Part shown: positions 11,146 to 50,460 of the stretch, piece by piece
How positions within the stretch are numbered: position 1 is the stretch's first letter
Layout of the letters: every line of letters begins with the position of its first letter
The notes under the pieces: generated by a model
The model's input: the letters and a program-made list of their open reading frames with translations, nothing else
Told to the model about the DNA's origin: nothing
The model's database searches: none
From: Mytilus californianus
Lineage: Eukaryota
Direction: 5' to 3'
DNA length: 64,000 bases
Assembly (NCBI RefSeq): GCF_021869535.1
Contig: NW_026262701.1
Location: 35,960,001-36,024,000 of the forward strand
Program-made: the position numbers and the translations under genes

Positions 11146-11153
11146 TATTTATA
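11146..11153 (-). promoter_or_regulatory. Candidate TATA box of gene A (TATAAATA)
   Basis: Consensus TATAAATA on the minus strand, about 155 nt upstream of the predicted donor. Confidence 0.5.
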
Positions 11154-19173: not shown

Positions 19174-19316
19174 GACAGGTAAAAATCTAAACATGCACAC
19201 CTGAGTTTAGGATAAAAGCATATTAAATAGGCGGAGCTAAATGACATTTATATGACCAATCAGCCCGAGGCTTTCAAACCAACATATAAAGCGTCAATAC
19301 TGCACAAAAGTCATTC
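19174..19316 (+). promoter_or_regulatory. Promoter-like module S1: CAGGTA, GC box AGGCGGAG (19229), CCAATCAG (19256), GGCTTTCAA, TATAAA (19285), Inr TCATTC (19311)
   Basis: Canonical order of Pol II promoter elements, with 28 nt from TATA to the Inr A; homologous to the module at 50378-50460. Confidence 0.5.
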
Positions 19317-19652
19317 ATAAAATGTAAATACAGCTTCTGTGGAAAAAAAAAACAGCATAAAAATATAGTGTTACTTAACAGAATTTGAAAACAGATATTT
19401 GCCTATTCACAGCTAAATGGATTATAAATATAGTGGAATGAAATGTCATAAGTTATTGGCCTTGCTTCGTATGGAAGTCTATGAAAGGTTTAAATATGCA
19501 TTAACGTAAAAAAAACGAACCATGCAGGCATAAGAAAGAACCTTTCATTTTGTGAATTATTAAAGTGCAAATATCTATATGTGCAGCATCTAATTATATT
19601 TGTTCATAATTCAATTATGAATGATCATTTTTGACAACTTCTGACCGTAACT

Positions 19653-19840
19653 GATATTCTGAAACCTTAAGACATATTAATTCAGTGAACACACATTATT
19701 AAGATATAGTGCATAAACATAGAAGTTTCAATGATAAAATTTATTTGATATTCTAAAACCTTTAGACATATCAATTCAGTGAACAAACTTTATTAAGATA
19801 TATTGCATAAAAATAGAAGTGTCAATGGTAAAACTTTAAG
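19653..19840. repeat. Two-copy tandem duplication, 94-bp period
   Basis: gatattctgaaaccttaagac... at 19653 repeated at 19747. Confidence 0.8.
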
Positions 19841-20979
19841 TGCACACTATCAACAATTTATGGTGCTTGTAATTCACAATATGAAAATCATATTGAAAAT
19901 GTATGAAAATTTAATTCTGACATACCAAAATTTGTATTTGATAGGTTATATCGTCATTAAAAATACCAAAACCAAAAGTTTGAAAGCATAAAATGTGCCA
20001 CTTTACAAAATGAACATAAGATATAGTAAAAAGGTGAAAGGTAAGCTTTTTCTGAGAGAGTTGAAACCTTGCACTTTTTGTATTTACAAAACAAAAGATG
20101 CAATAAACCATGCCCGATTCAATTATCTGCTAAAGAGAGAGAGAGAAGATACAAACAGAGCTATCAAAAACCACAAGTCGAATTATAATAGCATCATGAT
20201 TAACAAAAAAGACTAAGAACAGTTCATAAAACACAGCATAGAGAACAAAATAATGATTGAGCAACTTTTTACACACTATCGGCTGCAGTTTTTTTCAGAG
20301 GGGTAATGCACAGTGCTTAAAATGATCTTATGCAATTCTCGAAGTAATGGCTGATACAGAAAATAAAATAAATGAATAATGTAGACGTGTTTCCAACTAT
20401 AAATAAAAGATTTCAACTAAAAAAAAAAAACATGCATACAATAATCAGCTCAATGTAACGCTTTTGGAAGATTTCACCTCATTAAGAAACGCGTTTGCTT
20501 TTAAATTGATATTGGCATAATAAATTTTAAAAATGGATATGTAAAAAAACAACTATTTTTCAAAAACTTGATCTATAAATTTCACAGTACACACTCTATG
20601 ACCGGTTATCGGTACGACAGTTGCAATATAATTCAATATAATGAATGTACAACACATATTAATATCTGTCGTAAACCTTTCCGAAATCCATTTCATTGTA
20701 TTGCAATGGCAATCGGAAACTCAGATAAAAATCTGCTGTACTCTCTAGGAATTTTATTAAAGATTTAAGATTTTTTTTAAATGGCTTTGGTGGAAGAACA
20801 ATATAAGGAAACTTGGTCGGTTTGTGAAAATATCTGTCAAGCGTTTGTTTCGATGGAACTTTATGTAGTTTAAATATATAACCAGAGTTTTATTTCAATT
20901 AGATTTCACAGGTTACAAAACCCCAAAAGAGGATCCATGAATACCCTTGTATATCAAATATGAATAACAAATGACCGAA

Positions 20980-21435
20980 GCCCCCAAGGGTGACTGGGGA
21001 ATAGAAGTACATCCCGCACAGCCAAACGGACGCCCCACTTTGGCACGGGTTTTACTGCCGGTCGGAGGAAGACCAATGGTGACCATACTTCTATTCATGC
21101 ATATTCAGGACGAGAACAAGTTCACAATACATACAATAGGTAGGTTCTGTAATAGATTAAGGGATTAAGGTCGGAGAAATTTAGACTGCCACGGGAAATG
21201 AGGGTATTTTGGATAGGGACAGAAATTTAGCCTTGCAACAGGTCACCTACGGACCACTCAAAGAGTTGTTGTAAGGGTTCTTAACGTGCAAAGAACGTGG
21301 CACTCTCTTTACACGAGGCATCGGAGTTAACGTCCCCATTCTGACCGGAGTATGTATTGTGAACTTGTTCTCGTCCTGAATATGCATGAAATATTTGCCA
21401 CTGAACGTTAAGCAATCAACAATCAATCAATCAAT
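20980..21435 (+). mobile_element. SINE-like retroposon with (CAAT)n tail, 12-bp TSD and two internal inversions
   Basis: TSD caaatgaccgaa at 20968-20979 and 21436-21447. The core GGGACGTTAA...GCACGTTAAGAACC resembles the Meta/MESC-type mollusc SINE core (from memory). Homologs at 44270-44560 and 46235-46660. Confidence 0.8.
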
Positions 21436-24242
21436 CAAATGACCGAAAAATCCGGCAAGTTAAATACTAGTAACTGTAAATTAAGGAGTGAATCAGTTGT
21501 GTCACAAACAGTATACATTTGAATGTAATTACAGAGGAGCATGCAATAAAAATGATAAACAAAATGACGTACTAAGTGTTATAATTTTTCTACACGCTTA
21601 TATATTCTTTAGTTTGATCTATCTAACTGAGCTCGAAAACACCAATTTGATTCAATGTGATGATTCAATTTGATGTTAATTCCAGATCATTGTACTAAGT
21701 AAATCTCAGATCAATGTATCCATAACTTGTCTAGATGATCAAGAGCTTGGCAGATTCTATTGGCACATATTGACCAATTTAGATATCTCTTTTTTGTTAA
21801 TAAGATACCTTCTTCTCCCTTTTAATCATTCGATGAGTATAAGGGTGTAATACACAACAGTTATGTTTCGAACTGGATCTAAACTTGCTGTCCAGTATAT
21901 GATACGGGGATTTGCGGAAACCCAAAATGGTGTTAAATGAGTTGTATCGACAGGGTAAGCATCTTTATTCTACGTCTTTACTAAATAATATATATAACAT
22001 ATACATGGTCATTGTATCATCTTTGAATCTGTATCGTAAATTGATAGCAACAGTGCTATAGACATAATTGATAATTTATTAATCACCAACAAGGTCAACT
22101 GAAACACCGATCTGAAAAGGGCGAACAAAAGTCAATCCATTATGTTCAGCCGTTCATTTGGTCGGGTTGTTGTCTCTTTGACACATTCTCCATTTCCATT
22201 CTCATTTTATTGAATTTTCAGACTTTTCAATTGCAGTTAATTCAATACTGCCCACAATGCTTGCATGCATTGCTTTAGTTTTCTGTATTGTATACCAATA
22301 AACATTTTAAAAAAGGAGGAAGGATCCACAAACACTACACAGAAATTTTAGATTAAGCAACACGAACCCCACAAATCAACTGGGGAATGAAATGATGTGC
22401 TGTGGATGATTAAGAAGTTCCTGCTTAACCAGTGAACAGGTCGTGCTCATTGCAATTGAACATTCGTACAGTTGACCAGTTGCAATCAGATACAGATATT
22501 CCACAACGGCCAATTAATTATGATGGCGTCTCATTCTGTACTTTACGTACTTTATTTACAATAAGGAAAAAATAAACAACAAAAAGATGAATTTGTTCAA
22601 TTGTACAGAAAGAATCAATTGTCTGCAAAATGTGTTTGTTGAAAGATTTAAAAACTGCTCTTAGTTGACTTTCAATGTTCTGCACAAAAATAAAAATTTC
22701 ACAAACTGCTTTATATATAGTCAAAACCTTAATTCTCTGGAATACAGTTAGTGTAATAATTAATCTTGGAAAGTTCAGCGTTTCGATGATATTCTGGCAT
22801 AGAAAATTTCTCAGAACACTTTGGCGACGCAGTAAATAAAGAAGACGTTGGCTCTGGTATCAGACTGATATATGAGGTCTAAATACTCACTAAAAGGAAG
22901 ACCATGCATATATCCTTGCATAGGTTTCACTACAATAAGTTAGGTTTTCCGTTTTGCCATTAACTTCTGTATTTGGAACAACATCTACAAGTATTTCAGT
23001 TTTTCCCTGAAATTCAGCTGCGTCAAAAACTTAAAAATCCGAGGTTGCTCTTTGCTCGTAAAGGAGTTTTCCGTCGGTAATTGCGTGTTTAAATTTTAAT
23101 TCTTATTCAAAACTGATATAGATGATGAAAATAACCCTTTTTTTAAATTTGGTGTGTTCTAAGTGCTTTATACATGTCTTACCTGCACCAGAAACGCTCA
23201 AAATCTAAAAAAAAGTATAACAAAAATACTAACTCCAAGTCAAATTCAAAAAGGGAAAGTCCATAAAAACTGACAAAATCAAACGCTATCAATCAGCGGA
23301 TCAAATGAAAAAAAAAAACAACTGCCATTTTCCTGACTTTGGTACAAGCATTTTCCGAAGAAAATAGTGGGTTAAACCTGGTTTTATAGCTAGCTAAACC
23401 TCCCATTTGTAAACTTAGAAAGCCAAGGAATTATGAATACTTGAATACTTGAAGCGCTATGTGACTAAAAGAAATATAAAAATAACTGCCACATCCATCT
23501 TAGGTGGTCGTATGGAGTTGCAACCTTATTTTCTTAATATTTTCTATTACCAACGGATGATTTGATAATGGCCTGTTATAAAACATGTCAGTACCGAAGC
23601 ACTGACTACTGATCTGATGATACCCTTGGAAAATAACAGTTAATCAACATCAATATCGACCTATGGCTAGAAAAAAGAAATACATTTTTAAAATTTGGTA
23701 CTGTCATCAGGATCGCTCAAATCAAAAGAATTAAAAGTTAAAAATGAATAAATACTTCAACACTTGATTATATATATGATATGTATATATAAAGAATATC
23801 GAAAACCTATAGGTTAAGTTTAGGCTTTGATGGCATTGAAATGTAAAGATTACCCAGTTTATGAGTACTAACAAATGGAATGAGAGTACCCTTCTCTATG
23901 TACTCTGAACTTGTTCCTTCATACAGTGTACAGATTTTTCCTTCTGTATGCATATGTTTAAAAGAGCTTTAAAATTTTTATTCCTTTTGATGTCTGACCT
24001 CGTTCAAACAATTCAAGGATTCAGTCTATACACCTCATGGAAACAAACACGTTTTTATGTATATGTATATCTAGAATAAATAAGACCGATTGGGTCTTGC
24101 TGTGTACCTCTTTTTCCAGGCCTGCTCCTATACGGTTATGAATCACAGTTAATGGCTTTCTTCATTGAGACAAAATGAAACACTATTAGATACACATTTT
24201 CAGCAATATATACCTGTTGATATTTAGACGACATATTCTCTG

Positions 24243-25103
24243 TAAAAGAGGGAGTGACGGGACGAAAGATACCAGAGGGACAGTCAAACTCATAGATCGA
24301 AAACAAACTGACAACGCCATGGCCAAAAATAAAAAGACAAACAGACAAATAATAGTACAGATGACACAACATAGAAAATTAAAGACTAGGCAACACGAAC
24401 CCCACCAAAAACTGGGGGTGATCTCAGGTGCTCCGGAAGGGTAAGCAGATCCTGCTCCACATGTGGCACCCGTCGTGTTGCTTATGTTAATACAAATCCG
24501 GTAAATAGTATAATTCGATAGGTCACATTCGTGAAAAGGGAAGGGTATTGTAGTTACACGACATAAGGAACATATCCGATATCATCTGTGAAACGGTTAT
24601 TCCATAACGGTCAACCAACTCTTGATGGCATCCGTAAAATTTACGAAGGGATGATTTCAACTTCACCATTTGGATCTCTTGGTTTAATAGCTTCCTTGTG
24701 AGCAGCAATCCTCTATCAAGGAAATCATGATAGGAAATACAAGCCCGGGAATATCGTATCAATTGGGAGATATATACTCCGTATGCAGGCGCTGCTGGAA
24801 TGTTGCTACATAGAAATGGAAAGTTCACAATTGGAAAGCTGAAATCATCTCTTTTGTCGTAAAGTTTTGTTTTCAACCGACCCTCATTGTCAATTTCTAG
24901 ATGTAAGTTAAGATATGAGGCAGACTTAACTGTATCTGTAGTATCCTTTATCTCTAGTTCGATGGGATAGATTCGTTCAACATAGTCACCAATTTTTGTA
25001 TTATTTAGTGAGAGAACATCATCTATATGGCGGAAGGTAAAGTTAAAGGATATTGCTAACTTCTTATCTTTCTTCCTAAGAAGTTCCTGTATGAAGTCAG
25101 CCT
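24243..25103 (-). mobile_element. 5'-truncated Penelope-like retroelement (RT C-terminal half plus 3' UTR)
   Basis: Open frame reading FNFTFRHIDDVLSLNN...KTKLYDKRDDFSFPIVNFPFLCSNIPAAPAYGVYISQLIRYSRAC...LRKFYG; RT catalytic motif F-R-(Y>H)-I-D-D. PLE (possibly Naiad-type) assignment is from recalled family motifs. Confidence 0.8.
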
Positions 25104-25246
25104 ATAATAATCAAGATGTTTTTAAATATACAAATGATTTATGCAAAATCAAATCGTTCGGACATAAACCAACACGAAAAGGATGGTTGTCTTTTTCACA
25201 CCTTGACAGAATTTCTCATGGTTATCGTCAGACCAGGTTAGGCGAA

Positions 25247-25537
25247 GGTGGGGTTCGTGTTGTTCAGTCTTTAGTTTTCTATGTTGTGTTTTGTATACTG
25301 TTGTTTGTCTTTTAGTCTTTTTTTTTTTTGATTTTTTGCCATGGCGTTGTCGGTTTATTTTCGACTTATGAGTTTGGATGTCCCTCTGATTTTCGCCTCT
25401 CTTATATGATAAACGGGACTACATTTCCTTTTCAATTGTTAACTTTCCTTTTTGATGGTGATGTTTTCATGGTTCCTTTCTATGAAGAGTACATTTCGCA
25501 ATTGATTCGATATGTTAGTGTTTGCAGTCACGTTTAA
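25247..25537 (+). mobile_element. Older Penelope-like fragment: 3' UTR copy followed by RT thumb remnant
   Basis: 25247-25404 is an inverted, clearly diverged copy of 24243-24416; then YDKRDYISFSIVNFPF...YISQLIRY. Confidence 0.7.
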
Positions 25538-25728
25538 ATGAACGTTACTGTTCATTACTATTACCTTTTTACGAGAGGAACAAAATAAATATCAAAATAT
25601 TAAGAATAAGCCGAAACTTCTACAAATTATAGGCAACACGTGTTGAAGGCCTCACTGTGACATGGAGATAAGAGCATCCTTTGCTTTTTGCGTGTTTTTG
25701 CTGTACATGCACTGATTTTGTGTCATAG

Positions 25729-26857
25729 CCTCCTTATAGAACTGAAATGTTTGCCACAAATTTGCAGCAGACCTGCTGCAGATGTGCGGCAAACAAAAAG
25801 TTTGCAGGAAAACAGAAAATAGTGTTTGCAGATGTTTGCCGCTAGCTGCAAACTTCCAGCAAACATTGCAGTTTTTTGCTGCAAGCTTGCGGCAAGTTTG
25901 CGGAAACACCAATGTTTGCAGTAAGATTGAAAGATAGTTAAGATAATAAAGAATGTTTGCCGCTAGATTGCAGAAATATTTTACCATTCTATATGTTTGC
26001 AAGAACATTGCAAGAATTACACAATATTGTCTGGGCATGCCTAGTTGTCACTTCCTGGAAGCTGACAATTTGAAATTTTGGGCTAGGTCATCTTGATTGT
26101 GTTGGAGAAATGTTATATGCAAGAGATCAAAGAGGCATTTTGGTTCATTAATATAGGACATTCAATATGTAATTTTGTAAGTACAAATTATTCATAGAAC
26201 TGTAGATTTAATAAAATAATTAATGTCACCATAATACAAAATTAAGTTAACAACTATGTTTGAAATACTCTAGCTGTTATAAGTTTGGATTTTGTTACTG
26301 ATTGAATATATACCGTTTAATAAAGTTCATTTCAATTCTGTAATGAAAGTATTACCTATCTTAATGCTCAATACACATTTGAGATTTATCCGTTTTTATT
26401 TCTTTATATATATATTTACACTTGAGCATGACCCCCATTCAAAAAAGTATTTCTTTAAATATATTCACTAAATCATAGATAAATTTGCAAGTATTCTTTC
26501 AATGGCTGTATATATGTGCAGGAAGTTCTTTTTTTAGAATTTTGATGTGAAAATTTGAAAGAGATAAATTGAATGTGTCTACTCACATGACATTGGTATA
26601 TATGTAGTTCCTGCAAGTTTGCTGCAAACAAGCAGCAGAAAAAAATAACTGGTATAAAAAGTTTGCGACAAGTTTGCGGCAAGTTTGCAGCAAATCTAAT
26701 TTGTAAAATTATGTTTGCCGCAAGCTTACCATAAGCTTCATTTGCATGGTAAAATGGTTGCGGCAAGACTGCAGTAAATGTTTGCTGCAATCTTGCAGCA
26801 ATGTTTGCTGCTAGTTTGCTGCAAACGTTTGCCACAAGGCTTATTTTTCGGAAAGGG
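25729..26857. mobile_element. Non-autonomous DNA element with CC(T)CCTT...AAGGG ends and many GCAAGTTTGC/GCAAAC subterminal repeats (CACTA/EnSpm-like)
   Basis: Two repeat-rich arms around an AT-rich core; it splits a copy of repeat family C. Superfamily is inferred from the termini and a possible 2-bp TSD. Confidence 0.65.
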
Positions 26858-26989
26858 GGATGGATACCTCATATCCTTTGTTTTTCTATTATAATAACAG
26901 AGTTTGTCTCTCGTGCTGTGTGGAGGCCGTAGAAAGTTTCCCCGTGCTTGATATGTATGCTCTTCTGTATTTTTTAAAGTTATGGTGTA

Positions 26990-27760
26990 TTCATTCTTGA
27001 GATAACTTCTCTTATCTGTGCCATATCATTCTCTCAGTCGATCTTTCTCATAACTCTGTTCGAGCAGTTTTTTTTATTTAATCTAGAGCATCTCCCTATT
27101 CATGAAGTCCGTACAGTGCCAATGTGCATAAGCGTAACGTATCAATTGAGATATGTAAACACCATACGATGGAGCAGAGGGTATATTACTGTACGAATGG
27201 GAAGTTGAAAATTGGAAAGTGGGATCATCACGTTTGTCATAGATTCTACTTTGAAGTCGTCCATATGTGTCATTATCAAGGAAAAAATCAAGACATCAAG
27301 CTGACCTTCTAGTTTCAGGTTCACTTGTGTATATGAGATGGTAGCACTCACTGAATTGTGGGTAATTGATTGACAGGACATCATTATCTGAAAATGAAAT
27401 TTAAAGAACTTTGCGAGATGTTCTTTTTTCTTTTTGCCTTGTTGAAAAATAGCATAAATATATATGAGTTTGAGATTGTTATGATATATGATTCCATCTT
27501 CAGGAATTTTATCAAATGGGTATTTCACCACCACATTTATATCGTTATATTATCTATATACCTATCAAATGTAGGAATTGTAGTTTTGGTATTTCATTTT
27601 CGGATATTAGACTTATTGCATATGGTAAAGATAATAATTTACCGTTGTTGTTCAGTAATTGCATCCAAAATTTGTGTAGATGAAAATCAACGCCCTTATT
27701 TATAGTTTGAAGCAGCCTAAACTGTTCTTTTTTATATTCCGCATTGAAATTATCCACAAA
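26990..27760 (-). mobile_element. Decayed Penelope-like RT fragment
   Basis: With frameshifts reads DVLSINYPQFSE...GRLQSRIYDKRDD...SNIPSAPSYGVYISQLIRYA...KKLLEQSYEKDRL. Confidence 0.75.
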
Positions 27761-28494
27761 TTCATACTGAACACTGCAACTAACCGTGTCTTTATAAACC
27801 GTTTATGAGCTGAGCCCGTAACATGGTAAGACAAAGTTATTATGTGTGATACCTGTAAACAGTAGTATCACAGTTCCTGTCTGTCCATTAGCTCACGAAC
27901 ATACAATATCCTAGCAGACGACAGTGCCATAGCATGGGATTGCCTTATTTGCGACTGTCCAAAATTACAGCTCAGTATGCTTTGAACTGCTGCTGACAAC
28001 CTCAAATCCCCTCAGTATCCTGTCTGATTCATCACTTTAGAGTCCACTTCCATATGACTGCATCAAACCTATTCATGCATCCACAGCTGAGAGAAAGAAC
28101 CAGAATATACACTCAAAATCCAAAACTATGCCAATCAAGATGCTCTCAGTCCATTAAATCAAAACAAGGACTAGTCAAAAATCTAGTTGAAAGCACCAAA
28201 CCAGATATTGTCCTAGGTACAGAAACATAGATAGACTCCTCTATAACAGATAATCAAATATTTCCACCAAACTATAATATGGTATGTACAGAAACAATCG
28301 CAATATAAAAGGAGGGAGAGTGCTTATAGCGACCATCTAAGCACACATGTGCCTGAACTGCAAACCAATAGCGAAATTGTGTGGGCTAAAATAAGTCTAT
28401 CTGGAAACAAAGATATTTATCTTGCATCATATTACAACCCAGAAACAGCAAACGAAGAAAGCCTTGAAGAGCTGGGACACAGTCTAGAACGGGT

Positions 28495-29181
28495 AATTGC
28501 AATAAAACTTGCTTTCTTGCCAGTGTCTGAGCAGAACGTTGATGAACCATAGATATATCAAAGAACTTCTCGTCCTTTTTCTAAAAAAGTTCATCGGAAG
28601 ATACCAAGACCTTGTTGGTAAATATTCCGTATCAACTTCACAAATAATACACGATGGTCTTGAAGTATAGATTCTAGGTACTGACGTTGTTTATCATCTT
28701 AATTACTTTTTATAGTGTTCTTTTATTTGTCTTTGTAAATTATTACTTTTACTGTTTAGTCTATTTTGGTGTTTTTTTTGTATTCTTGCCTTTCGTTTTT
28801 GCTGATGTGCTTTGTCTATATGCCTTTTTGTATTTCTTTGTTGACATATTTATCTGTTTTTATATGGATTAAGATTATAACACAATGTTGACTGATGTTC
28901 CCCCTATTTTTGACATTATATGTCTGTTTGTTTTGTTCACACAATGTTGTCAATATAATTGAATTTTATGCGACTGTCATACAAGTGAGAGGTTTAGCTA
29001 GCTATAAAACCAGGTTTAATCCACTATTTTCTACATAAGAAAATGCCTGTACCAAGTCAGGAATATAACAGTTGTTATCCATTCGTTGATGTGTTTGAGC
29101 TTTTGACTTTGTCATTTGATTAGGGACTATCCGTTTTGAATTTTCCTCGGAGTTCGGTATTTTTTGATATTTTACTTTTTC
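28495..29181 (+). mobile_element. Insertion in the LINE endonuclease: 3' end of a second Penelope-like family plus dispersed repeat B (ggtttagctagctataaaaccagg)
   Basis: LINE frame breaks after GHSLER and resumes at IVVGGDFN. The insert reads CLSRTLMNHRYIKELLVLFLKKFIGRYQDLVGKYSVSTSQIIHDGLEV*. An inverted copy of repeat B lies at about 23210-23415. Confidence 0.75.
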
Positions 29182-30726
29182 ATAGTAGTTGGTGGTGATT
29201 TCAACCTTCCAGGCTGGAATTGGTTAACAAGAACTCTAAAACCAGACTCTACTTGAAAAAATTACACTACAAATTTGACGACAGCTTAAACGACAATGGC
29301 CTTATACAACTGGAAGAGGAACAAACAAGAGGTCCCAATACATTGAACCTAGGGATCACAAACAACCCGTTACGCTTCACTCGTATCAAATTAATACCTG
29401 GGGTGTCAGACCACGATATTGTCTTCAGTGAAATAGAGACCAAGCCTATATCAAGGAAGCAAAAACCAAAAAAAATACCCTTATATGGGAAAGCAAACTG
29501 GGAAACTATCAAACAGGAAATGAATGAAACTCATCAGAAGGTCAAAGAATTAGCTGCAAATTGGAGTTCAGCGGAGAAACTCTGGTTACTGTTCAAATCC
29601 AAGCTCAACCAGAGTGTAACAAATCATATCCCGCAGAAAACTGTAAAACAGAAAGATAACATCCCTTAGCTCACTCCGAATGTACGCAAGTTAATACGTC
29701 GTCGGGACAGATTGCACAAAAAAAAGGCAGCAGATTCAAAAACCACCACAAAATTTAAAAAAAAACAAGCAAATGGTTCAGAGAGAACTCCGTCGTGCAT
29801 ACTGGAATTACATTAAAAACATAGTATCACATAAAGAGGAAAACAAGCAATACAGTAATATGAACAGTTCTGGACATACATAAAACATAAATGAAAAGAG
29901 AGCAATGGCGTGGCACCACTACATAGTGAGGGATTACTACATTCGCACCCAGTAGACAAAGCAACCATCCTTAATAAACCGTTCCAATCAGCTTTCTCCA
30001 TCACAGATACATACAATCAACGTGAGTTCTTATCTCGATGTCAGTTGTCAGGTGAAAACCCTTCTGCAGAGGAACATAACACAACAGAAAACGGAATACT
30101 AAAATAACTTACGAAAATTAATCTAAATTAAGTAGCAGGACCCGACAATATAAGACCAAGATTACTACAAGAACTGGCATCGGAAATAGCCCCAATTCTT
30201 ACAATCATCTTTAAAACATCAATTGAAACAGGGGACGTACCATCTGATTGGAGGAATATCAATGCTAGTCCAGTCTTCAGAGAATTATCGACCATCATCT
30301 CTGACTTGTATCTGCTGCAAACTTACAGATCACATTATCACAAGCCACTTCATGAACCATGCAGATCGCCCGCAAACTCTCTACCAATTACAAAACGGCT
30401 TTCGTTCTAAACGATCTTGCGAAACCCAGCTTATTGAATTTGTGGACGGCATCACCAACAACATGAGTGCAGGCAAACAGACAGATGTACTGATTATGGT
30501 TACAGTCTCCTCGTACATAAACTCGAACACTATGGAATCAGAGGAAATGTCAATAGGTGGATTGCTATCTTCCTGTCGCATCCAAGAAGCAGTAGTAGTG
30601 GACGGATAGAGCTCATCACATATTTATGTAGAGTCTGGGGTACCCCATGTCTCAATCTTTTGGCCTTCACTATCCCTTTTCTACATTAACGATATGCCCG
30701 ATGGAATTAAATCCACTATCCGCCTA

Positions 30727-31119
30727 GTGTGTTCTTATAGGATCACCAGTCCTTCACCTTTCATCTGATACCTTAATTACTAAAATATATGCTACAAAGT
30801 TTAAGATTTACACCTGTGCGTAGGAACTATTTGGTTTTAAATATGTACGTCTTTCCAGTATGTTCTTTTTTGACCGGGCCCGATTAGGTGGTGTTACATC
30901 TTACAAAGTCTATCCAAATTATTTTTGCAAAGAATTCCGCTCAAACCGGTGCTTGGGGCGGTCTTAAACTTGCAGTGTGGTGAGAGTCTCACTGTGACTT
31001 TCAGATGAAGAACAGCAATAAAAGCGCTGTTCCTTTGCTTTTTGTGTGTTTTTTTTGCTGTGCATATACTGATTTTGTGTCATGGATGGATACCTCATAT
31101 CCTATGATTTTCTATATTA
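30727..31119 (+). mobile_element. 393-bp dispersed repeat family C inserted in the LINE RT at a duplicated TA
   Basis: cgccTA[insert]TA tttgcagatgac; homologs at 25651-26895 (interrupted) and 57478-57682 (minus). Confidence 0.85.
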
Positions 31120-36153: not shown

Positions 36154-36289
36154 TATTCGTACAGTGTAGGAAAATATAAATGTATTTGTACTCGCTACGA
36201 AAAGTGAAAAAATCTCGGCGAGCCTCACTTTTCTCTCGGTTTCTAAAGCTTGTCAAATAAATTTCATATTTTCCTACACTGTACGAATA
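36154..36289. mobile_element. Small fold-back element / MITE with about 35-bp imperfect arms
   Basis: tattcgtacagtgtaggaaaatat... / ...atattttcctacactgtacgaata. Confidence 0.7.
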
Positions 36290-38225: not shown

Positions 38226-38268
38226 CATCACAGAAGAGACATTTATTGTCGAAATGCGGATATAGTGC
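38226..38268 (+). ncRNA. Decayed type I hammerhead-ribozyme-like remnant
   Basis: CAGAAGA (CTGANGA with U4>A), GACA-tttat-TGTC stem II, GAAA, ATG-CG-GAT stem III with one mismatch. Confidence 0.45.
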
Positions 38269-40119: not shown

Positions 40120-40470
40120 TAGATGTGGTATAATTTTCAATGAGACAACTCTCCACCAGAGACCAAATGACGTGGAAGGTTAGCAACTAAAGGTCACCGT
40201 ACGGCTTTCAACAATGAGTAAATCCAATACCGCATAGCAAGTTTGAAAGGCTCCGAAATGACATTTATTAAACAATTCAAACGAAAAAACTATAATGGCT
40301 TGATTTATGTACAAAACAATAAACAAACAAAATAGATGATATACAGCAACAAATGACAACCGCTGAACAACAGTCTCCTGCATGACTTTGGACAGGAACA
40401 TGTAGAATGTGGGTGGGTTAAACATGTAAGCGGGAGCCCAACTCTTCCCTATAACCTGGACCAGTAGTGA
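40120..40470 (+). repeat. Dispersed repeat family A, long copy
   Basis: gagacaactctccaccagagaccaaatgac...ggtcaccgtacggctttcaacaatgag, shared with the other copies. Confidence 0.85.
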
Positions 40471-41496
40471 AACAGCCATGATCATATACATTTTGCATGT
40501 TGTTTGATCGTTTTTTTAAGCTGTAATCAATGCTATATAAACAGCCTTATGTAGACCATTAGTATTGGATTATGCTTGTCGCTTGCTAAATTATTCATAT
40601 TTGAGTTCCTTCTGATGCTTATTAGGTTTAAGCAAGTGGAACTAATGTTCAAATTGCATTTCAAACAAGACTTTCTAATAACAAAACATGTTATAATCTT
40701 GACTGCATTTGTCGCAATCAGAAACAACACTCATATAACATGCACCATGATTGGTTAATAAAATAAATCTTATCCATAACAGTTTGCACGACTCTGGTTA
40801 TCATAAAATTGAAACAGGTAATATTTGTGAGATGCTAGTAAGTATTCAAAATCTTCAGACATTCGGAAGAAAGTACCATAAAACTGAACTAGTAAGTATG
40901 TCACGCATGTAGCCATTGCTGTTGAGGGATGTTAGAACTTTTCCCCGAGTTTGAATATCATATATATCATTTTCAATGCTTTCGTTCTATTTACGACATT
41001 ACAATAAAAGGTAGGATGGGGCAAGAAAAACATCACCATCGGCTAAACAGAGAAGTTGGTTTTGGGAAGTTGAAATCGTCTCTTTTGTCGTGTATATAGT
41101 TTCAAATTTTCCATTTCGTACCAATACTTATGTTTTTAAAAGTGAACAATAATGACTGTTATTATTATTAGCTTTATTTAACTGAAGTTCTTTTGAATAC
41201 ATGCATTCAGCAGGTTTTGGTAAACTAGGAATTATCAATTATCAGTATAAGCCCAGATTCGAATTTCAGGTTCTAAAGGCAACAATGTAGTATGTGCAGT
41301 TGTTGACTACAGTTGTCTTTAAAACTTTTAAGTTTGAAGAAAAAATAACTAAAGAGATGTGGGGGACACGACAAGGTCCCATGCAACTCAACGACACAAA
41401 TAATCACAAGACATGCATCTAGAGGTCAACAGCCAGTCTTCAAAATAGACACGTGTCCATACATTATGTCTTGAAAGCTATAAATCTTAAAGCCAC

Positions 41497-41609
41497 TAAT
41501 TAAAATTAGTTCTCCGCACTTGCTCCTCATTTTCGTTCCGTTGTTTCTCGCGCGACATATAAATAGCCGAACGAAAATGTGCACAAGTGCGGAGAACTAA
41601 TTATAATTA
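41497..41609. repeat. 113-bp long hairpin (mini-MITE or hairpin RNA candidate)
   Basis: taattaaaattagttctccgcacttg ... caagtgcggagaactaattataatta, plus inner cattttcgttc/gaacgaaaatg pairing. Confidence 0.8.
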
Positions 41610-44269
41610 ATTTGTCGTATAGCTTACTATATATACGGTATGGGTTTTGCTCATTGTTGAAGCCCTTATGGTGATCTATAGTTGTGTAGACCCTCGTCCT
41701 TTATGATCTCTGAAAGAAAGTGATCTCATTGCCAATCATACCACGTTGTGTTATTTTTATATATAAATCTACATTGTTGTTTGTCGTCTGTATTATATTT
41801 GACATATTTTATATGGTGCTAAAATGGCGTTCGAGATTGGTATTATTTCAGTTCTTAAATATTTTACTATATTGAAACGAAAAGCCGAAATACATCCCCT
41901 GTATTTGTTTCACTACTGGAAATTAGAGTATTATAGAGACCAAAGAATTTTCCATCATTTTACATATGTCCATGACATCGAAATGTAATTCACTGCTTAA
42001 CATTTTTGGGAAACCTTTAAAACAATACTGCACATATATAGATATAAGAAGATGTGGTATGAGTGTAAATGAGCTAGACAACTCTCCATCCAAGTCACAA
42101 TTTGTAAAAGTAAACCATTATAGGTCAAAGTACGGCCTTCAACACGGAGCCTTAGCTCACACCGTCTGACAGCAAGCTATAAAGGGCCCCAAAATGACTA
42201 GTGTAAAACAATTCAAACAGGAAAAACCAACGGTTTAATCTATATAAAACACGAGAAACATCTTAATATAATACTGCAAATTTTGCATGTTTTTATTTGG
42301 TAAATTTTTGCCTCGAGTGAAAAAGTTGACCAACATGCATGAAATTAAATTGCAACTTTTTTTCATATACTATACTTTAAATTTTTCAAAATACTATGAA
42401 TGTTTGTAAGATTCATAGATTTAAATGACCCATATATGCAATAAACTCATTGTCCGGAAAATTGTCCCCAACTCTATATAAGGTAAGCCCAGAAAAACTT
42501 TTAACATGCTATTCAAATTTTCATGACAACACACGTTTTATTTTGCAATAATTCACTATCAAAAATTCACAAATCTTTTCACACTTTTTTCCATAATGAC
42601 AATCAGTAAATAATAAACAAACCCATAATAACTAATCATTAACCCGTAGTGTATACACAAAGAAGGTGTAAATTGTGGGATGAGTACCTACATCAAAGTA
42701 CAAAGGGTGGCATTAGGAGGTATTTATTTGGTCATTTTCACACTTTATTATTTATGTATAAACATATGTCCAGCCACGGTGTATTCTTTGAAGTCTGGCT
42801 TCAGTAACACCTTTTGTTAATCCGCGGCTTACTTCAAACAAGGATTTGCAGATATCCGACAATATGATCTTTAATGAATTGCATTTATTCAAAGATTTTT
42901 TGTTGAAATCTTTATAAATATAAGATTTTCATCCGTTCATAATTAGTTGTAATACAAATTTGACTGATTTTCAATCCGGCGATTTTTGAGGATTTTTTTA
43001 ATCATGTTCCAGACTATTGTACTTTTCTTACTTATCTGTTTTAAAAATTTATCTATATGTCAATATAATACTTCCATGATAGACTTTATGTTAAAAATAA
43101 GATAGTCACCAATGTCTTAGTCTTCGAACTTATCTTGAGTTATAAATGGCGATATGGCGGTGTAAGAAAAAACAATTACATGAAATTAAACGATTTCCGA
43201 TTATTTTTTCTCGACTAGATTAAGTCAATCTGATTAATGGAAATAAAGATAAAAATGTTTTTTCATGGAATTATTGGTTTAGCAAGTTGGAATTGTTTTC
43301 TTTACAAATACGATTTCCCCAAGTTGCATCTTGAACTTTATCACTGCGTCTCTCATTAATCTTCTGACGAGAAAATAGTCAACTTTACAAAATATCAATT
43401 TAAAATTAGTAAACATTATGTGAAGATAACCATCTCATCTTATCTTAAACAAAGGCTGTGCTTAATACCTCGTTAAAAGTAAATACTATTTTCTCAACAA
43501 ATTACAATCGATTTGACCTTTTTATTGTTCACGTAAATTACATATTATTTGATAAGTTCGTAGCTCACTCAAATTGTTTGTTTTTGGGCTTTATTTAAAG
43601 AATTTATGTTGTAACGTAAGTCAAGCTTGATTTTACAACCAACATCTGTTATGGTATTTTATCGTGTATCTTAAAGTTTATGTAACGTAGATTACAGTCA
43701 TGTATAATCATTCTAAATAGTGTATTTATTCCAGAAATGGGTTTATATCCATAAAATAAATAGACAGATTATAAATTGTAAACAATGATGTGTCTAGATG
43801 GTCATTTTCTCGTGTCAAGATGATTTCCCTAATAGAGATAAGTAGTTAATTTACATCTGTTCTAAGTCTGGTCAAATAATGGATCAGGGATGTTCATATT
43901 TCCTTAGTCTGAACAAACACGGGACTAAGTATCAATAGATATCCTGACTCGTTAATTAAAGTTTTTGCTCTTCATACAGTTTGGCCGAAGACATAGTGTG
44001 TTTTATTTCCTCTTTTTAGTAGGTTTTGGATTCAGATTCAATATTTTATTAAAAGTCTTACAATTTATATAAAATGAAACATTCAAATACACACTTAAAG
44101 AATCATAAACATCACTATGGAAAATATTAAGTGTGCAATAACAAAAAAAAAAAAAACAAGCACAACAATATAAAATAGATTCCTTTGAATATAAAATATA
44201 AATAATATATATCAATTGAATATTGTTGACATGTTTCCTAAAACTGCATTACATATGCAAAAAAACTGG

Positions 44270-44560
44270 ACTTCCCCAATTCGATAGCAAAACCCTTGCT
44301 AAAGTGGGGCGTCCGTTTTTCTGTTCGGGAAATATAGATACACAGCAACGTCCGGTCAGATTAGGCACTTAAATCCGAAGCCTTGTGTAGGGAGAGTGTT
44401 ACGCTTTCTGCACGGAAAAACCTCCTTGCAATAGTTCCTTGAGAGGTCCGAAAGTGTCCTGCTGCAAGGAAAAAATTGAAGCTATCCAACATACCCTCAT
44501 TTTCTACCCTCATCTTGGTCGTCTTTCCTTGCTGAACCTATACCTATAGTATTAATAATG
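44270..44560 (+). mobile_element. Diverged partial copy of the same SINE-like family
   Basis: aaaacccttgctaaagtggggcgtccg...tccggtcag...ccttgtgt...ataccctcatttt colinear with the other copies. Confidence 0.75.
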
Positions 44561-45802
44561 GTCTAGATATGAATATGTATCAATCATTTGTATGAAAAAT
44601 GCAAGAAGAAATTGTTTTGAATAATCTATTTTGTTTTTTCTGTTTTTTTTTATAAAAATGCACAGTCATTCCTTCTTATACCGACTGTGGCTCATTCCAC
44701 TTGTCCTGCAACTCTTTTGCGAATTAACTTTCGCCCTGTTGACCATTGAACATTCATGTAATTTTAGCTTTTCCTTATACAAAAATGTTTTCTTATAATC
44801 AAATCGAGTATGTGTATAGACAAAGAGCAACTTGCAAAATTCTGTTTGGCACAATTAATCTCAATTAAAAATAAAGTGAAGTCCAAGTGGCACAAGAGCT
44901 GACTTACCTTCCGAAGAACCTAAGGATACCTCAATTTTTAGTCTTTAGTTTTCTGCGTAGTGTTTTTCTGGACTTTTGTTTGTCGTTTTGCCATGATGTT
45001 GTCTGTTTCTCTTCAACTTATGATTTTTCTTTTCCGTCAATAACTGAAAATACATATCAGCGAAGGAACCGGGGATAATGAACTTCTAGTACTTATAAGT
45101 TTATCTAATCCTGGGGGTTTTATTTTTTTTAAATAAGTCGTTAATATTTTACAATGTCACGTTTGAAAAAAAACTATATTCTAATAATTTTTTGCAAATG
45201 TCATGATACTATGCTCTGATATTGATGTTTTTGTGAAGAATGAATAAATGTTTTATGGAACTCTTTATAGCGTTTATCTATCGTTAATGTTATATTTTAA
45301 AACAGAACTATAAACATATGACAACGGCTATTTTCTTTTCTTCTAAAATGTTACGACTGTTGTTCTAATTTAAAGCCATAAACTAGACCAAATGCTTCAA
45401 GTTATATTGGTATGCCATGATCATACAGGAACAAAAAAGCTTTACGACCTTAAAGTCTTGATGTTGATATCAGAAACAAAACCAATCATGGTCCTTCTCT
45501 TAAAAAATAAAACAATCGAAGCCATAAAATAAATGAAACATTTAGACATTGTTCGCTATTGACAGATGATTTGTTGCGTTCCCTCATAAAACATGACTCT
45601 GTATAACTATATTGCGTGCAATCTGCATATTTTGCAGTCAACTATGTCAGGTTACTTATTTTATTATCATTGAACAATGGAATTTATGGGTTTGACCAAT
45701 GAAACATCTTTTATTAGTGTGCAACCCTCCTTTGTATAAATGAATGAAAATTGGAAATCGAAAAATTGCCACATTTGAAGTCCAGTAAATTTCTCGTCTT
45801 TA

Positions 45803-46174
45803 TAGGTTACAAGAGCGCAATTATGCGTAATGCATTTTCCATAGGGTACCAGTGGTGTTTCTTATTTTTGTCTTGAAGACTACACAAACTAACAAAAAAC
45901 GGGTAACAGTTCCTGTTACTAGAAATCCCAGTGTTGCATAACAACCAAAAACATTTATATGGTCATGCTGCAAAAATTGACTTAAAATGCAGTTGGAAAA
46001 CATCGTCTATTTTTTTGGCTAAATGAAAAAGGCATATTTTTCTGGATTTTTTAAACCTTATTGGATAAGCTTTTGATTAAAAGTAATTCCAATCCTGTAT
46101 CATCCAATCAGAAGCCGTACAAGATTCTATTCTGAGTACCATCTTCCGGTAAATAATTGCGCTCTTGTAACCTG
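45803..46174. mobile_element. MITE with 21-bp perfect TIR and TA TSD (Tc1/mariner/pogo-type)
   Basis: AGGTTACAAGAGCGCAATTAT (45804-45824) and ATAATTGCGCTCTTGTAACCT (46153-46173); TA at 45801 and 46175. Confidence 0.85.
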
Positions 46175-46234
46175 TATCTCTGTTGATACAATATGGCAGA
46201 TCCTATGTTATCATCACGGAATGCATTATCACTA

Positions 46235-46660
46235 ACTGATTGATTGGTTGTTGTCTGCTTTACGTCCAGTGTCAAATATTTCATGCGTGTTCAGGACGAG
46301 AATAATTAACAATAATTATAGTAGGAAGGTTCTGTGATTTATAAGTGTCGACCAGGATGCAGGGCGAGAAATTTCGACTGGAAAAAGATGGTATATTGGA
46401 TATAGGGACAGACATTTTGTCTTGCAACAGGCAACCTACTGACCCGTCAAAGAGTTGTCACAAGTGTTCTTAACGGACACGTAGAGAGTGTGTCACTCTC
46501 TCTACACGAGGCATCGGATTCTAACCAGACGTGACTGCATATTTATACATCCCGCACAGCAAAATGGACGTCCTTCTTTGGCAAGGGTTTTACTTCTGTT
46601 TGGAAGAAGACAAAAAGCGACCATATTTATACCCCAGTCACCTTTGGGTTTATCACTAAC
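46235..46660 (-). mobile_element. SINE-like family copy in unrearranged order
   Basis: gattgattggttg tail (reverse complement of CAATCAATC) at about 46238; segments colinear. Confidence 0.75.
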
Positions 46661-49508
46661 TGGGGTATACTTTAAACTCAAATATCATGAGGAAAAATGA
46701 CAAATTAACACCATATTATCTATATATAGTTACAAATATGAATTGGTTGGGCGTTACAGTATAGTGTTCATCTTGAACATTTTAAGAAGACAACATTATA
46801 AAAGAAACAGTACTGAGATCGCATCCGGAGTTAGTTTGGGTTCTTTTTGTACAGACATTTAGTTTTTCTATGTTATGTTTTGTATACTATTTTTGGTGTC
46901 GTTTTTGGTGTATTTGCCATGATTTTGTAGGTCTTGTTTTGATTATGCCTTGGTATCTTCCAATTCTTAATTATTGTATTGAAGAGTTGCCAAATACCGT
47001 CATGATTGGGGTTAAACTGTGGCAACTCTTCAAATACATAAGTTATTCCTTAAATCGAATAAAGGCAGATTTCTTATAGACCCACCTAGTTTCACTTTGG
47101 CTTTGAAGATTACTGGTATAAATGTATGCGATTCCGACTGTTTCCACTGTCAAATTTTGCTTTAATACACTTGGATTTCACTGGCTTAATATCTCTAGAT
47201 TATTTGATATTTTGACTAGTTAGTTTAGATGTGAATTAATAAGGTGGCCATACGGTACCGTTTTGGCAAAACCCATTCTTATGTACTTAATGTTAAGTTC
47301 TCGCATTGACTTAACAGCTTGATATAAATTATGGCTTGACATATGGAAATCGTTTTATTTCCATGAAAAAATCTATTAATCGGACTGCTAACAACAAGGA
47401 ACCACACAGTTTACAACACAAACAAAAAAAGTAGATCGCTGACCATAACTGACATTTTAGTTGATACCCGCACCGAACGCGTGGATCTGTCATTTTTACA
47501 CGTGTTTCAATTCTTAAAAAATAAATTGACAAAAATTTCTACAAAACAGATAAGAAAGAATTATTAAAAATGTCGTCCATTATAATTGTGACGGCTACAG
47601 ATCTGTCAACTGAGATTCTATTCATACTCATCAAGGTGGAAATACAAATGTTGCATCTAATTGAAAAACAACGGGATAGATGAACTCTGATTAGCTTAAC
47701 GTTTCAACTTACATCGATTTGAAGAATTAATTCAGGATTACTTGTTGTCCTTGGTTCTCTTCTTTGTCTTTAATGAGAAAATTTCCTGTTTTTAACGTTC
47801 CTACGCATGCGGAACGTTTTGTGGTTTATCGAGATGGAAAACGACAAATGGGTTCGTGGTTTGTAACATAGGGGACACATGATCTTGCATAATGGTACGA
47901 AATAATAAGTTTTTAAAGAGAAATTGTGATTAAATTACAGAAAGAATCAATTGCGTTGAAAAAAATGTGCGTAACAGTCAGATAATAGTTTTTATTGCAA
48001 TACTGAATTGACACAATAATAGTTAATTGGGAAAACAGGTACGCATATTTATACTCTCTCCGGCCCTACAAAAGAAATGGTAGCGTTTATGTTTCGCTCA
48101 TTCGGACCCCAAGCACCATTTTGGAACCAACCATTAAAATAAAAGATTTTAAGCTTGATGAGATTTTTAAAATCTTCTGAAAATATCCTTGAAACCCATC
48201 AAGCTACTGGTTCAATATGAATGTCGTACAAGTGAATGCACGAACGGACGGACAGACAAGGCTCTATATTCACCCAGTTTACTGATAAGGGTTAAAAAAA
48301 AACAACTGATCACAACAGAAAACAATCAAACTATCTTGATTGTGATTTCTATACATATAGATTCAATAAAATTTTAAACTGGTCGAAATGATAGTAAATT
48401 AGAGTGACATTGTTTGGAATTATAATAAAGTAAGCCTCTCATTTGTAGTTTAAGTCTATGACTTATTTTACCGCATATAAAGAAAAGCTGAATGACTAAT
48501 ATTAAATTGTTTTAAATTAACATTGACCATTTGCCAATTTTATTTACTAATACATAATCAGTTTTACAACTTTGACAAAACAGACTGACACTCTATTGAA
48601 TATGCATAAAAGGAACTACAATTTTAAGCTTGTAATTGTCCAGATTTCGCGATTAGATATTAATCAAACATCCCCTCAAAATGTTGATCTTAAAAAATAT
48701 TGTGAATGGTGAAAATACCACATTACCCAAAACAATAAATAACAATGATCATAATATTGAGTCATATATATTTAGTGGGAAGCATATGTGTTAACATTCC
48801 ATTATGTATCTTAAGTAGGTTTAATTACAATTTACTAGTCCGTGAATATCTATATTTATCTGATAAGTGGGTCTAAACGTAATATGAAGTTCCGTGGGAT
48901 ATATTAAGTCTGTTAATCTTTTCAGTATCCTTATATGATGTTTTTCCAGCTTAAATACAATAAGTTGTTTTATGAAGCCATTTTTTTAATTTGGTATATT
49001 TTGAATTTGTATATTGATGTATATGTACATGTATGTTAAAACTTCCCCTTAGCTCCCCTATAAGTATTATATAAAATTTTCTCTCACGAAGATCAACTTT
49101 TTTCTGTGGTTTATATTTATTATTTGTGTTTTGTGCAGTCTTTGTACTTTTGACCAGATGTCAATACAAAGACAAATCGCTCTTATCACATTGTCAAATT
49201 TTCCAGACATGTATGAAGTATCAAATAAACTAAAAAATGTGTATTCCCTTTATGTTGTTTCTGAAGGTGTGTCATATCTTAAAATATGAAATATCTTCCC
49301 ATAAGTAAAAGATGAAAGACAAAAGGAAATATTATTTTTAGATATAAATAGTCAAAGCCTCTTTTTGCGATCTTGAAACTTTCTTATTATTTCGCTTTCG
49401 TCATGTTGATCTTCGACAGAAAATGTTTCGAATGCAAGGACCTCCCCCCATTTATCACTGTGACTGCTTATGATGTATTGTCAAACAGCTACTAAATGTT
49501 ACCGTAAC

Positions 49509-49541
49509 CAATGAGGTTCTATTCTGAATAGAACCTCATTG
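49509..49541. repeat. 33-bp near-perfect palindrome
   Basis: caatgaggttctattc-t-gaatagaacctcattg. Confidence 0.9.
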
Positions 49542-50377
49542 CTTTACTATACAGATATGATCTTAACCAGCTCTGTCGTGAAATAGACCAACTTGTCCAG
49601 TAAATGATTCGGAGACTGCGAAACCAGGCAATCATGTTTTCTTTCTACGTCCTCTTTCATTTGTATTAACTAGGTTATATATACAGTGTGGTCCTTGATC
49701 TTATTTTCTCAACAAATTTTGACTTCTATTTTATAATATAGCTATCATACGGTAAATAGGCCGTTGCGACCTCATGTTCAGTATGTAACTGTGTGTATGT
49801 CCTCTTTATTAGCATTTTTCCTGTATTATACCGACAGTTACAGCATCGCAAATATAATAGTTCTATGAATATAAGGGCATCACATCGTGTAAGTATAGAA
49901 CATTAATTAAAAACCAAACAGTCAAATGTGTTACTGATGGAATCTGAGACTCAAGGCTCTGCTTGAGAATGCTATTACACCATTACAGTGTAATTCTTTT
50001 ATCAGTTGAAACAAACAAGGCAATAGAAACTTTTGTGAATTTATAACTGTTTGGATGTAAAACAGTTTTATATTTAAAAGAACATGCATGGTATTTTGTC
50101 AGTCAGTGATCTGGTTGTTCTCGTTCCGTCCATGCAATTGACAACATTGTTAGAGCAAACTTTATAAGATATCTTTGAAATAAATAAAAAAATCTATTTG
50201 GCATTTGGATATGCTCATTCATAATGTGAGCTAATGACAAAAATGTTTTAAAATATTGCCGTTTTGAAAACCATAGGATTAATAATAGAGACTTGTGTCA
50301 GGTTATTTACATTTAAAAAATCATAAAGTATTAAAATCAGTGTTATCAAAAGAGCAATTTACCTGTTCGTTTGATGG

Positions 50378-50460
50378 TTATAAATTGAAAACCGATATCT
50401 CATTGGCTATTATAGATAATGTGACTCCGCCTCTTTTAAAATGTGTAAATTTCACCTGTG
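50378..50460 (-). promoter_or_regulatory. Promoter-like module S2: CAGGTG, GC box AGGCGGAG, CCAATGAG, GGTTTTCAA, TATAA
   Basis: On the reverse strand it has the same motifs in the same order as S1, with near-identical GC-CCAAT and CCAAT-TTTCAA spacing but diverged spacers. Confidence 0.45.

What the first reader, a model, noticed from the sequence alone, without database searches (positions are those of the whole stretch)
19174..50460. Mirror-image non-coding module about 8 kb upstream of each paralog
Seen: S1 (19174-19300, plus) reads acaggtaaaaatctaaacat...aggcggag-19nt-ccaatcag-5nt-ggctttcaa..tataa. S2 (50460-50378, minus) reads acaggtgaaatttacacat...aggcggag-18nt-ccaatgag-5nt-ggttttcaa..tataa. 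Motifs and spacing are kept while the spacers diverge. The GC box of S1 is about 8.08 kb from the gene A TATA and that of S2 about 8.43 kb from the gene B TATA, each antisense to its gene. Inference: the inverted duplication that created the pair may have included a distal enhancer or divergent promoter that has been retained in both copies. The alternative is two old copies of a TE that happen to sit symmetrically.
Basis: partly seen in the sequence, partly recalled or inferred. Interest (0 to 1): 0.72.

Follow-up and report, generated by a model that had tools for sequence, protein, structure and literature searches.

The report
Own promoters of two paralogous genes
The two "mirror-image modules" are the ordinary core promoters and non-coding first exons of the two paralogous mussel genes, each separated from its coding exon by an intron of 8-9 kb, so they are not distal enhancers or transposon relics.

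Summary
Both stretches carry TTGAAARCC-N5-CTSATTGG-N18/19-CTCCGCCT (19229-19277 minus; 50385-50432 plus). This composite occurs only at these two places in the 1.65 Gb genome, and each stretch is single copy, so a transposon relic is excluded.

Public spliced contigs settle it.
- **Gene B:** three contigs join window 50450-50561 directly to the ATG at 59444.
- **Gene A:** four contigs join 19185/19126-19061 directly to 10780, 23 nt before the ATG at 10757. In four laid runs, two on record as RNA, one contig each covers only 19060-19185..19205 and then leaves the stretch.

S1 and S2 are therefore each gene's own promoter, start region and 5'UTR exon 1. GT donors follow at 19060 and 50562, with introns of 8,280 and 8,882 nt. 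The "gene TATAs" at about 11.15 and 58.86 kb lie inside those introns.

On the sense strand the order is inverted CCAAT box (NF-Y-like), a TATA box 1-3 nt later, CTCCGCCT, then the start. The module is kept in M. coruscus and M. edulis, with changes only in spacers.

This is an ordinary feature of low interest.

The parts
19269..19277 (-). Gene A upstream box TTGAAAGCC
   Evidence: Pattern match. Invariant in M. coruscus and M. edulis.
19256..19263 (-). Gene A inverted CCAAT box CTGATTGG. On the other strand it reads CCAATCAG, which fits the NF-Y consensus.
   Evidence: Invariant in the orthologs.
19247..19252 (-). Gene A TATAAA box, 3 nt after the CCAAT box on the sense strand
   Evidence: Read directly. 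Kept in the orthologs.
19229..19236 (-).
19061..19205 (-). Gene A non-coding exon 1. The 5' limit is the furthest contig end; the true start probably lies a few to about 20 nt upstream. The GT donor is at 19060-19059.
   Evidence: Contigs L015, L016, L018 and L019 join 19061 to 10780. Contigs of X1, X2, X5 and X13 cover 19060 to 19185/19191/19199/19205 with no mismatch and then leave the stretch.
10781..19060 (-). Gene A intron 1 (8,280 nt, inside the 5'UTR).
9435..10780 (-). Gene A exon 2, from the acceptor to the stop codon. ATG at 10757, 440 codons. The 3'UTR runs on to about 9193, past an AATAAA signal.
50385..50393 (+). Gene B upstream box TTGAAAACC
   Evidence: Invariant in M. edulis.
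50399..50406 (+). Gene B inverted CCAAT box CTCATTGG (CCAATGAG on the other strand)
50408..50419 (+). Gene B TATA-like stretch TATTATAGATAA
   Evidence: Read directly. One A-to-G change at its second position (50409) in M. edulis.
50425..50432 (+). Gene B CTCCGCCT box
50450..50561 (+). Gene B non-coding exon 1. The 5' limit is where contig L007 meets sequencing-adapter letters. The GT donor is at 50562-50563.
   Evidence: L007, L008 and L009 join 50561 directly to the ATG at 59444.
50562..59443 (+). Gene B intron 1 (8,882 nt).
59444..60670 (+). Gene B coding sequence (408 codons). It starts at the first base of exon 2.

Best explanation
S1 and S2 are the RNA polymerase II core promoters, start regions and non-coding first exons of gene A (minus strand) and gene B (plus strand).

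On each gene's sense strand the order is:
1. TTGAAARCC
2. 5 nt of spacer
3. an inverted CCAAT box, CTSATTGG
4. a TATA or TATA-like box 1-3 nt later
5. CTCCGCCT
6. the transcript 5' end, 18-24 nt or less after CTCCGCCT
7. a 5'UTR exon of at least 112-145 nt
8. a GT donor
9. an intron of 8.3-8.9 kb
10. an acceptor 0-23 nt before the ATG of a single large coding exon

Shown: the transcripts, the splice junctions, single copy in the genome, and conservation in orthologs.

Inferred: NF-Y binds the CCAAT box and TBP binds the TATA box; CTCCGCCT and TTGAAARCC bind further factors; and the shared syntax was inherited from the ancestral gene and kept by selection in both copies of an old head-to-head duplication.
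For: **Gene B junction**
- L007, L008 and L009 come from three runs and encode a protein 96% identical to B.
- Their 5'UTRs equal window 50450/50488/50505-50561 and are joined directly to 59444.
- In L007, adapter letters abut 50450/50451, which marks a fragment end.

**Gene A junction**
- L015, L016, L018 and L019 come from four runs. They join 19185 or 19126 through 19061 to 10780.
- In read laying, X5 (RNA-Seq), X13 (polyA RNA-Seq), X1 and X2 each have one contig of 474-1736 nt that lies on 19060-19185..19205 with no mismatch.
- None of the pieces listed for these contigs lies elsewhere in 16500-22400, and cover is essentially nil in the intron next to the donor (18273-19060) and zero upstream (19258-20045).

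**Splice signals**
- Donors: AAAAAG|GTATGT and TTTAAG|GTAAGT.
- Acceptors directly before both coding exons.

**Copy number**
- Exon 1 plus promoter is single copy for each gene.
- The composite motif occurs twice in 1.65 Gb, with none in the control.
- There are only two protein paralogs, so the spliced contigs do not come from a retrocopy.

**Orthologs**
- The same module sits at the orthologous place in M. coruscus A, M. edulis A and M. edulis B. All differences fall in spacer 2.
- Identity to M. edulis peaks at 95-100% over 50300-50500, against mostly 68-88% in the flanks, lower at indels. For gene A it is 93-100% over 19340-19021.
- The head-to-head layout is kept in M. edulis.

**Outgroup**
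- A scallop homolog has ATTGG, then TATAAAA, a short first exon, a 6 kb intron and a large coding exon.
Against: - The start sites are not mapped to the base. Contig ends lie 42-47 nt after the TATA boxes, further than the usual 30 or so.
- The CCAAT box sits only 1-3 nt from the TATA box and 35-55 nt from the start. That is closer than the usual -60 to -100 (PMC11802806), so joint NF-Y and TBP occupancy is uncertain.
- No binding or chromatin data exist.
- Plain alignment statistics for S1 against S2 are weak (p of about 0.05), so descent of the module from one ancestral promoter is not proven.
- Most runs are only guessed to be RNA. Their contigs lack the intron, which argues for RNA.
Confidence: 0.93

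Rival explanations
1. Both stretches are promoters, but the shared motifs are generic or convergent and were not inherited from the ancestral gene. CCAAT, TATA and GC-rich boxes occur in many promoters.
For: - Alignment similarity is barely above background.
- The scallop homolog has only ATTGG and TATAAAA, without TTGAAARCC or CTCCGCCT.
- The shorter syntax CTSATTGG-N15-22-CTCCGCCT also occurs at two unrelated places in the genome.
Against: - The full composite, with spacing equal to within 1 nt, is unique to these two places in 1.65 Gb.
- S2 is the best non-self match of the S1 core in the window.
- The two genes also share the same unusual exon and intron layout.
Confidence: 0.25
2. One reading: a distal enhancer or divergent promoter about 8 kb upstream of each gene, retained in both copies.
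For: - The distances to the TATA-like sites are as stated.
- The motifs are of promoter or enhancer type.
Against: - The genes' own mRNAs begin in the modules and are spliced to the coding exons.
- The reference TATA sites are intronic.
- No cover was seen in the divergent direction.
Confidence: 0.03
3. Two old copies of a transposable element that happen to lie symmetrically.
For: The region between the genes holds several dispersed repeats.
Against: - Each stretch matches only itself in the genome.
- The composite motif has only two genomic matches.
- No terminal repeats flank the stretches.
- The stretches are conserved at orthologous places.
Confidence: 0.01

Closest known systems
CCAAT-box plus TATA-box RNA polymerase II promoters bound by NF-Y
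   Same: The CCAAT pentamer has NF-Y-type flanks (CCAATCAG and CCAATGAG), lies in inverted orientation and sits just upstream of the start. A TATA box follows, and transcripts begin downstream.
   Different: - The CCAAT box lies 1-3 nt from the TATA box and about 35-55 nt from the start, instead of -60 to -100 (PMC11802806).
- Two further conserved boxes of unknown factor are present: TTGAAARCC upstream, and CTCCGCCT between the TATA box and the start.
- No binding was tested.
Genes with a non-coding first exon and a long 5'UTR intron
   Same: There is a short untranslated exon 1 and a first intron of 8-9 kb, and the ATG sits at or within 23 nt of the start of exon 2.
   Different: None in kind. 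The same layout is kept in both old paralogs, and a first intron of about 6 kb is present in a scallop homolog.
Head-to-head paralog pairs that keep promoter motifs after duplication
   Same: The two divergently oriented paralogs have start regions about 31 kb apart. They share an ordered motif set, and the layout is kept in M. edulis.
   Different: The proteins have drifted to 27% identity, while about 25 promoter positions and their spacing persist. Co-expression was not measured.

Membership tests
Pol II core promoter with first exon | Mature transcripts of the gene begin in or just after the element, on the gene's strand | tested here: met
   The 5' ends of contigs lie at 19185-19205 (A) and at 50450 (B).
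Pol II core promoter with first exon | Exon 1 is spliced to the coding exon at canonical GT..AG sites | tested here: met
   Junction 19061|10780 is seen in 4 contigs and junction 50561|59444 in 3 contigs. The splice sites were read.
Pol II core promoter with first exon | TATA box about 25-35 nt before the mapped start | tested here: inconclusive
   The TATA boxes lie 42-47 nt before the furthest contig ends. Contigs usually stop short of the true start, and no CAGE data are available.
NF-Y-bound CCAAT box | CCAAT pentamer with consensus flanks | tested here: met
   CCAATCAG and CCAATGAG. Both are invariant in the orthologs.
NF-Y-bound CCAAT box | Occupancy by NF-Y and the usual position of -60 to -100 | not testable with these tools
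   The position here is about -35 to -55, nearer than usual (PMC11802806). ChIP or a gel-shift assay is needed.
Distal enhancer | Lies away from the start site and is not part of the mRNA | tested here: not met
Transposable element relic | Many dispersed copies in the genome | tested here: not met
   Only self matches were found. The composite motif occurs twice.
Bidirectional (divergent) promoter | Stable transcripts on both sides | tested here: not met
   Cover was zero at 19258-20045 in four runs.

The most novel reading that the evidence does not exclude
The tightly packed cassette is TTGAAARCC-N5-CCAAT, then TATA 1-3 nt later, then CTCCGCCT and the start. It may be a lineage-specific promoter syntax held under strong selection since an ancient duplication. 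In that reading, CTCCGCCT between the TATA box and the start would act as an undescribed core-promoter element, and the cassette would keep two highly diverged, disordered paralogs co-regulated.
Probability: 0.15. Interest if true: 0.4.

Novelty: new member of a known kind. Interest (0 to 1): 0.2.

Why it matters
- It corrects the gene models. Both genes start about 8.3-8.9 kb upstream of their coding exons, and the TATA-like sites next to the coding exons are intronic.
- The M. edulis model of gene B starts about 4 kb further upstream again and adds 25 residues that the transcripts do not support.
- It gives a small, clean example of promoter syntax outlasting protein similarity after duplication. 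It also gives defined motifs for reporter tests in bivalves.
- Otherwise the feature is ordinary.

Tried and rejected
- **Self-comparison of the window.** Neither BLASTN setting found an extended inverted duplication at DNA level. Only dispersed repeats are shared between the two halves, and the two introns share no homology apart from short dispersed-repeat matches.
- **Exact-protein look-ups.** The window's own A and B proteins are not on record. Near-identical cluster members gave the transcript contigs instead.
- **Unspliced contigs.** L011-L014, L021 and L022 are collinear with the genome upstream of the ATG. They are DNA or unspliced RNA and say nothing about the start.
- **Shorter syntax.** CTSATTGG-N15-22-CTCCGCCT has two further genomic matches, on C1 and C13. 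The C1 site resembles A's promoter locally, but no A/B-like coding sequence lies in the 10 kb fetched around it, about 7 kb of that downstream of the site. I take it as chance or unrelated.
- **Metagenome scan.** The full pattern gave one GC-rich contig from activated sludge, with no match to the window or to the M. edulis locus. This is a chance match.
- **Protein identity.** Pfam and the protein atlas give no identity for the proteins. Pfam also gives nothing for three intergenic ORFs.
- **Scallop promoter.** It lacks TTGAAARCC and CTCCGCCT. A look-up of the Pecten isoform failed.
- **Joined model.** I did not build or search a joined exon 1 plus exon 2 model. All junction evidence comes from public contigs compared with the window exon by exon.
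Full report
**What is in the sequence**

On one strand of each stretch the same ordered set of boxes occurs. At 19277-19229 (minus) it is TTGAAAGCC, 5 nt, CTGATTGG, 19 nt, CTCCGCCT. At 50385-50432 (plus) it is TTGAAAACC, 5 nt, CTCATTGG, 18 nt, CTCCGCCT.

The composite pattern found no match in any of 100 shuffles of the window. In the whole 1.65 Gb assembly it occurs at exactly these two places, and the reversed-pattern control finds none. Because the pattern was derived from the pair, this shows uniqueness rather than independent significance.

Plain alignment statistics are weak:
- BLASTN with word size 7 does not pair the two stretches.
- Smith-Waterman scores give p of about 0.05 against random pairs from the window.
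- With scores that allow for the 33% G+C content, S2 becomes the best non-self match of the S1 core in the window on either strand. The margin is narrow (23.6 against 22.2), with p of about 0.002.

**The two genes**

Gene A is a 440-codon open frame on the minus strand, with its ATG at 10757 and its stop at 9435-9437. Gene B is a 408-codon frame on the plus strand at 59444-60670.

They are the only two relatives in the genome, at 27% identity and E = 1.2e-8. BLASTP aligns only their C-terminal 33 residues. Pfam and the protein atlas give no family.

Both coding exons begin at a 3' splice acceptor. In gene A this is ttatttacag|G at 10781/10780, 23 nt before the ATG. In gene B it is tttatttgtag|ATG at 59443/59444, preceded by a tactaac branch-point motif.

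**Transcript evidence for gene B**

The protein search found a 96%-identical protein carried on three short public contigs. Their 5'UTRs equal window 50450-50561, 50488-50561 and 50505-50561 at 98-99% identity. Each is joined directly to the ATG at 59444.

The genome reads TTTAAG|GTAAGT at 50561/50562. In L007, sequencing-adapter letters abut 50450/50451, so a cDNA fragment ended there.

**Transcript evidence for gene A**

Cluster members of the 94%-identical protein P0009 lie on contigs from four runs. L015 and L018 match 19185-19060 and then 10782 onwards. L016 and L019 match 19126-19060 and then 10782 onwards. The genome reads AAAAAG|GTATGT at 19061/19060.

I also laid four runs on 16500-22400. 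X5 is on record as RNA-Seq and X13 as polyA RNA-Seq. In each run a single contig of 474-1736 nt lies on 19060 to 19185, 19191, 19199 or 19205 with no mismatch. No other listed piece of these contigs lies within the laid stretch.

Cover is essentially nil just inside the intron (18273-19060) and zero upstream (19258-20045). The deep bins at 18.1, 20.8-21.4 and 22.0-22.2 kb are dispersed repeats at 90-95% likeness.

Exon 1 and its promoter are single copy, and there is no third protein match. The intron-less contigs therefore come from spliced RNA and not from a retrocopy.

**Anatomy on the sense strands**

| Feature | Gene A (minus) | Gene B (plus) |
|---|---|---|
| TTGAAARCC | 19277-19269 | 50385-50393 |
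| Inverted CCAAT box | 19263-19256 | 50399-50406 |
| TATA box | TATAAA, 19252-19247 | TATTATAGATAA, 50408-50419 |
| CTCCGCCT | 19236-19229 | 50425-50432 |
| Furthest transcript 5' end | 19205 | 50450 |
| Exon 1 | through 19061 | through 50561 |
| Intron 1 | 19060-10781 (8,280 nt) | 50562-59443 (8,882 nt) |

Two further similarities lie inside exon 1:
- A CAGGTG/CACCTG hexamer sits 20-25 nt after CTCCGCCT, in opposite orientation in the two genes.
- An AAGCAWWCAATCT block is shared.

Its 'tataa' lies upstream of TTGAAARCC on the sense strand.

**Conservation**

In M. edulis the two genes lie head to head on one contig, as they do here. The composite pattern occurs once in each fetched ortholog locus, at the orthologous place:
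- M. coruscus A: L017 1182-1230
- M. edulis A: L020 1333-1381
- M. edulis B: L010 14154-14201

All differences from the window fall in the second spacer. About five independent changes occur there and none in the 25 box positions, which would happen by chance with a probability of about 0.03.

Identity to M. edulis peaks at 95-100% over 50300-50500, against mostly 68-88% in the flanks, lower at indels. For gene A it is 93-100% over 19340-19021.

A scallop homolog (Ylistrum balloti, L023) has ATTGG followed by TATAAAA, a short first exon, a 6 kb intron and one large coding exon. It lacks TTGAAARCC and CTCCGCCT.

**Mechanism**

Shown: transcription of both genes begins at these modules, and the primary transcripts lose an 8-9 kb intron from the 5'UTR.

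Inferred from general knowledge of Pol II promoters:
- The CCAAT boxes have NF-Y-type flanks (CCAATCAG and CCAATGAG) and would bind NF-Y. NF-Y keeps the upstream edge of core promoters free of nucleosomes and helps fix the start site (PMC11802806).
- The TATA boxes would bind TBP.
- CTCCGCCT has a partial GC-box core (GGCGG) on the other strand. It and TTGAAARCC would bind further, unidentified factors.

Caveats: the CCAAT box is only 1-3 nt from the TATA box and nearer to the start than the usual -60 to -100 (PMC11802806). The start is not mapped to the base.

**Origin**

The shared motif order with spacing equal to within 1 nt, the shared gene layout and the head-to-head arrangement all fit an old inverted duplication that carried the promoter and first exon with it. 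Neutral sequence has since been erased, and the two introns share nothing but short dispersed-repeat matches. Convergence on generic promoter elements cannot be excluded, and I give it about one chance in four.

**Verdict**

- The transposon alternative is refuted.
- The enhancer or divergent-promoter reading is replaced by an ordinary one: each module is its gene's own promoter and first exon.

Noticed in passing
window 60803-61492 (+): Gene B has a 690-nt intron in its 3'UTR, with donor TTA|GTAAGT and acceptor tttcag|AC. It starts 132 nt after the stop codon. Contig L008 runs from 60802 on to 61493 onwards. A junction this far past the stop could expose the mRNA to nonsense-mediated decay.
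   Followed up: partly
window 4105-4734, 5265-5871, 6842-8462; 54894-56059: Three tandem arrays (units of 32, 42 and 55 nt) lie downstream of gene A. A 44-nt array of 26 copies lies inside intron 1 of gene B. The 55-nt array is also present after gene A in contigs L011 and L012, which are about 90% identical to the window.
   Followed up: no
L016 1-29; window 19126: Contig L016 carries 29 letters at its 5' end that match nothing in the window, and they join exon 1 of gene A at 19126. L019, with a neighbouring run accession, starts at the same base. No AG precedes 19126. This could be an alternative 5' end, another haplotype or an assembly chimera.
   Followed up: partly
window 19095-19066 (-) and 50441-50464 (+): Short upstream open frames sit in the leaders. 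In exon 1 of gene A the frame is ATG TCA TAT GGA TCT CAA TAT AGA ATC TAA. Gene B has a 7-codon frame starting at 50441, which counts only if the start lies upstream of that base.
   Followed up: no
L010 10001-14154 (M. edulis CAJPWZ010000544.1): The deposited M. edulis model of gene B (P0002, 432 aa) starts about 4 kb upstream of the promoter module. It adds 25 N-terminal residues that are absent from the protein called on the window-species transcript contigs. This is probably a mis-predicted first exon.
   Followed up: partly
G000:C1:111928758-111928789 (L024 1501-1532): A third genomic site reads CTGATTGGTCACTCAAATAGATTCCTCCGCCTATGTAAAA, which locally resembles gene A's promoter (CTGATTGGTCA...CTCCGCCTAT.TAA). 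No A/B-like coding sequence lies in the 10 kb fetched around it.
   Followed up: partly
window 18076-18272, 20834-21424, 22016-22212: Short dispersed repeats show very high summed contig depth in all four laid runs at 90-95% likeness. They belong to families also seen at 12.3, 40.1, 41.7, 58.3 and 63.5 kb of the window.
   Followed up: no
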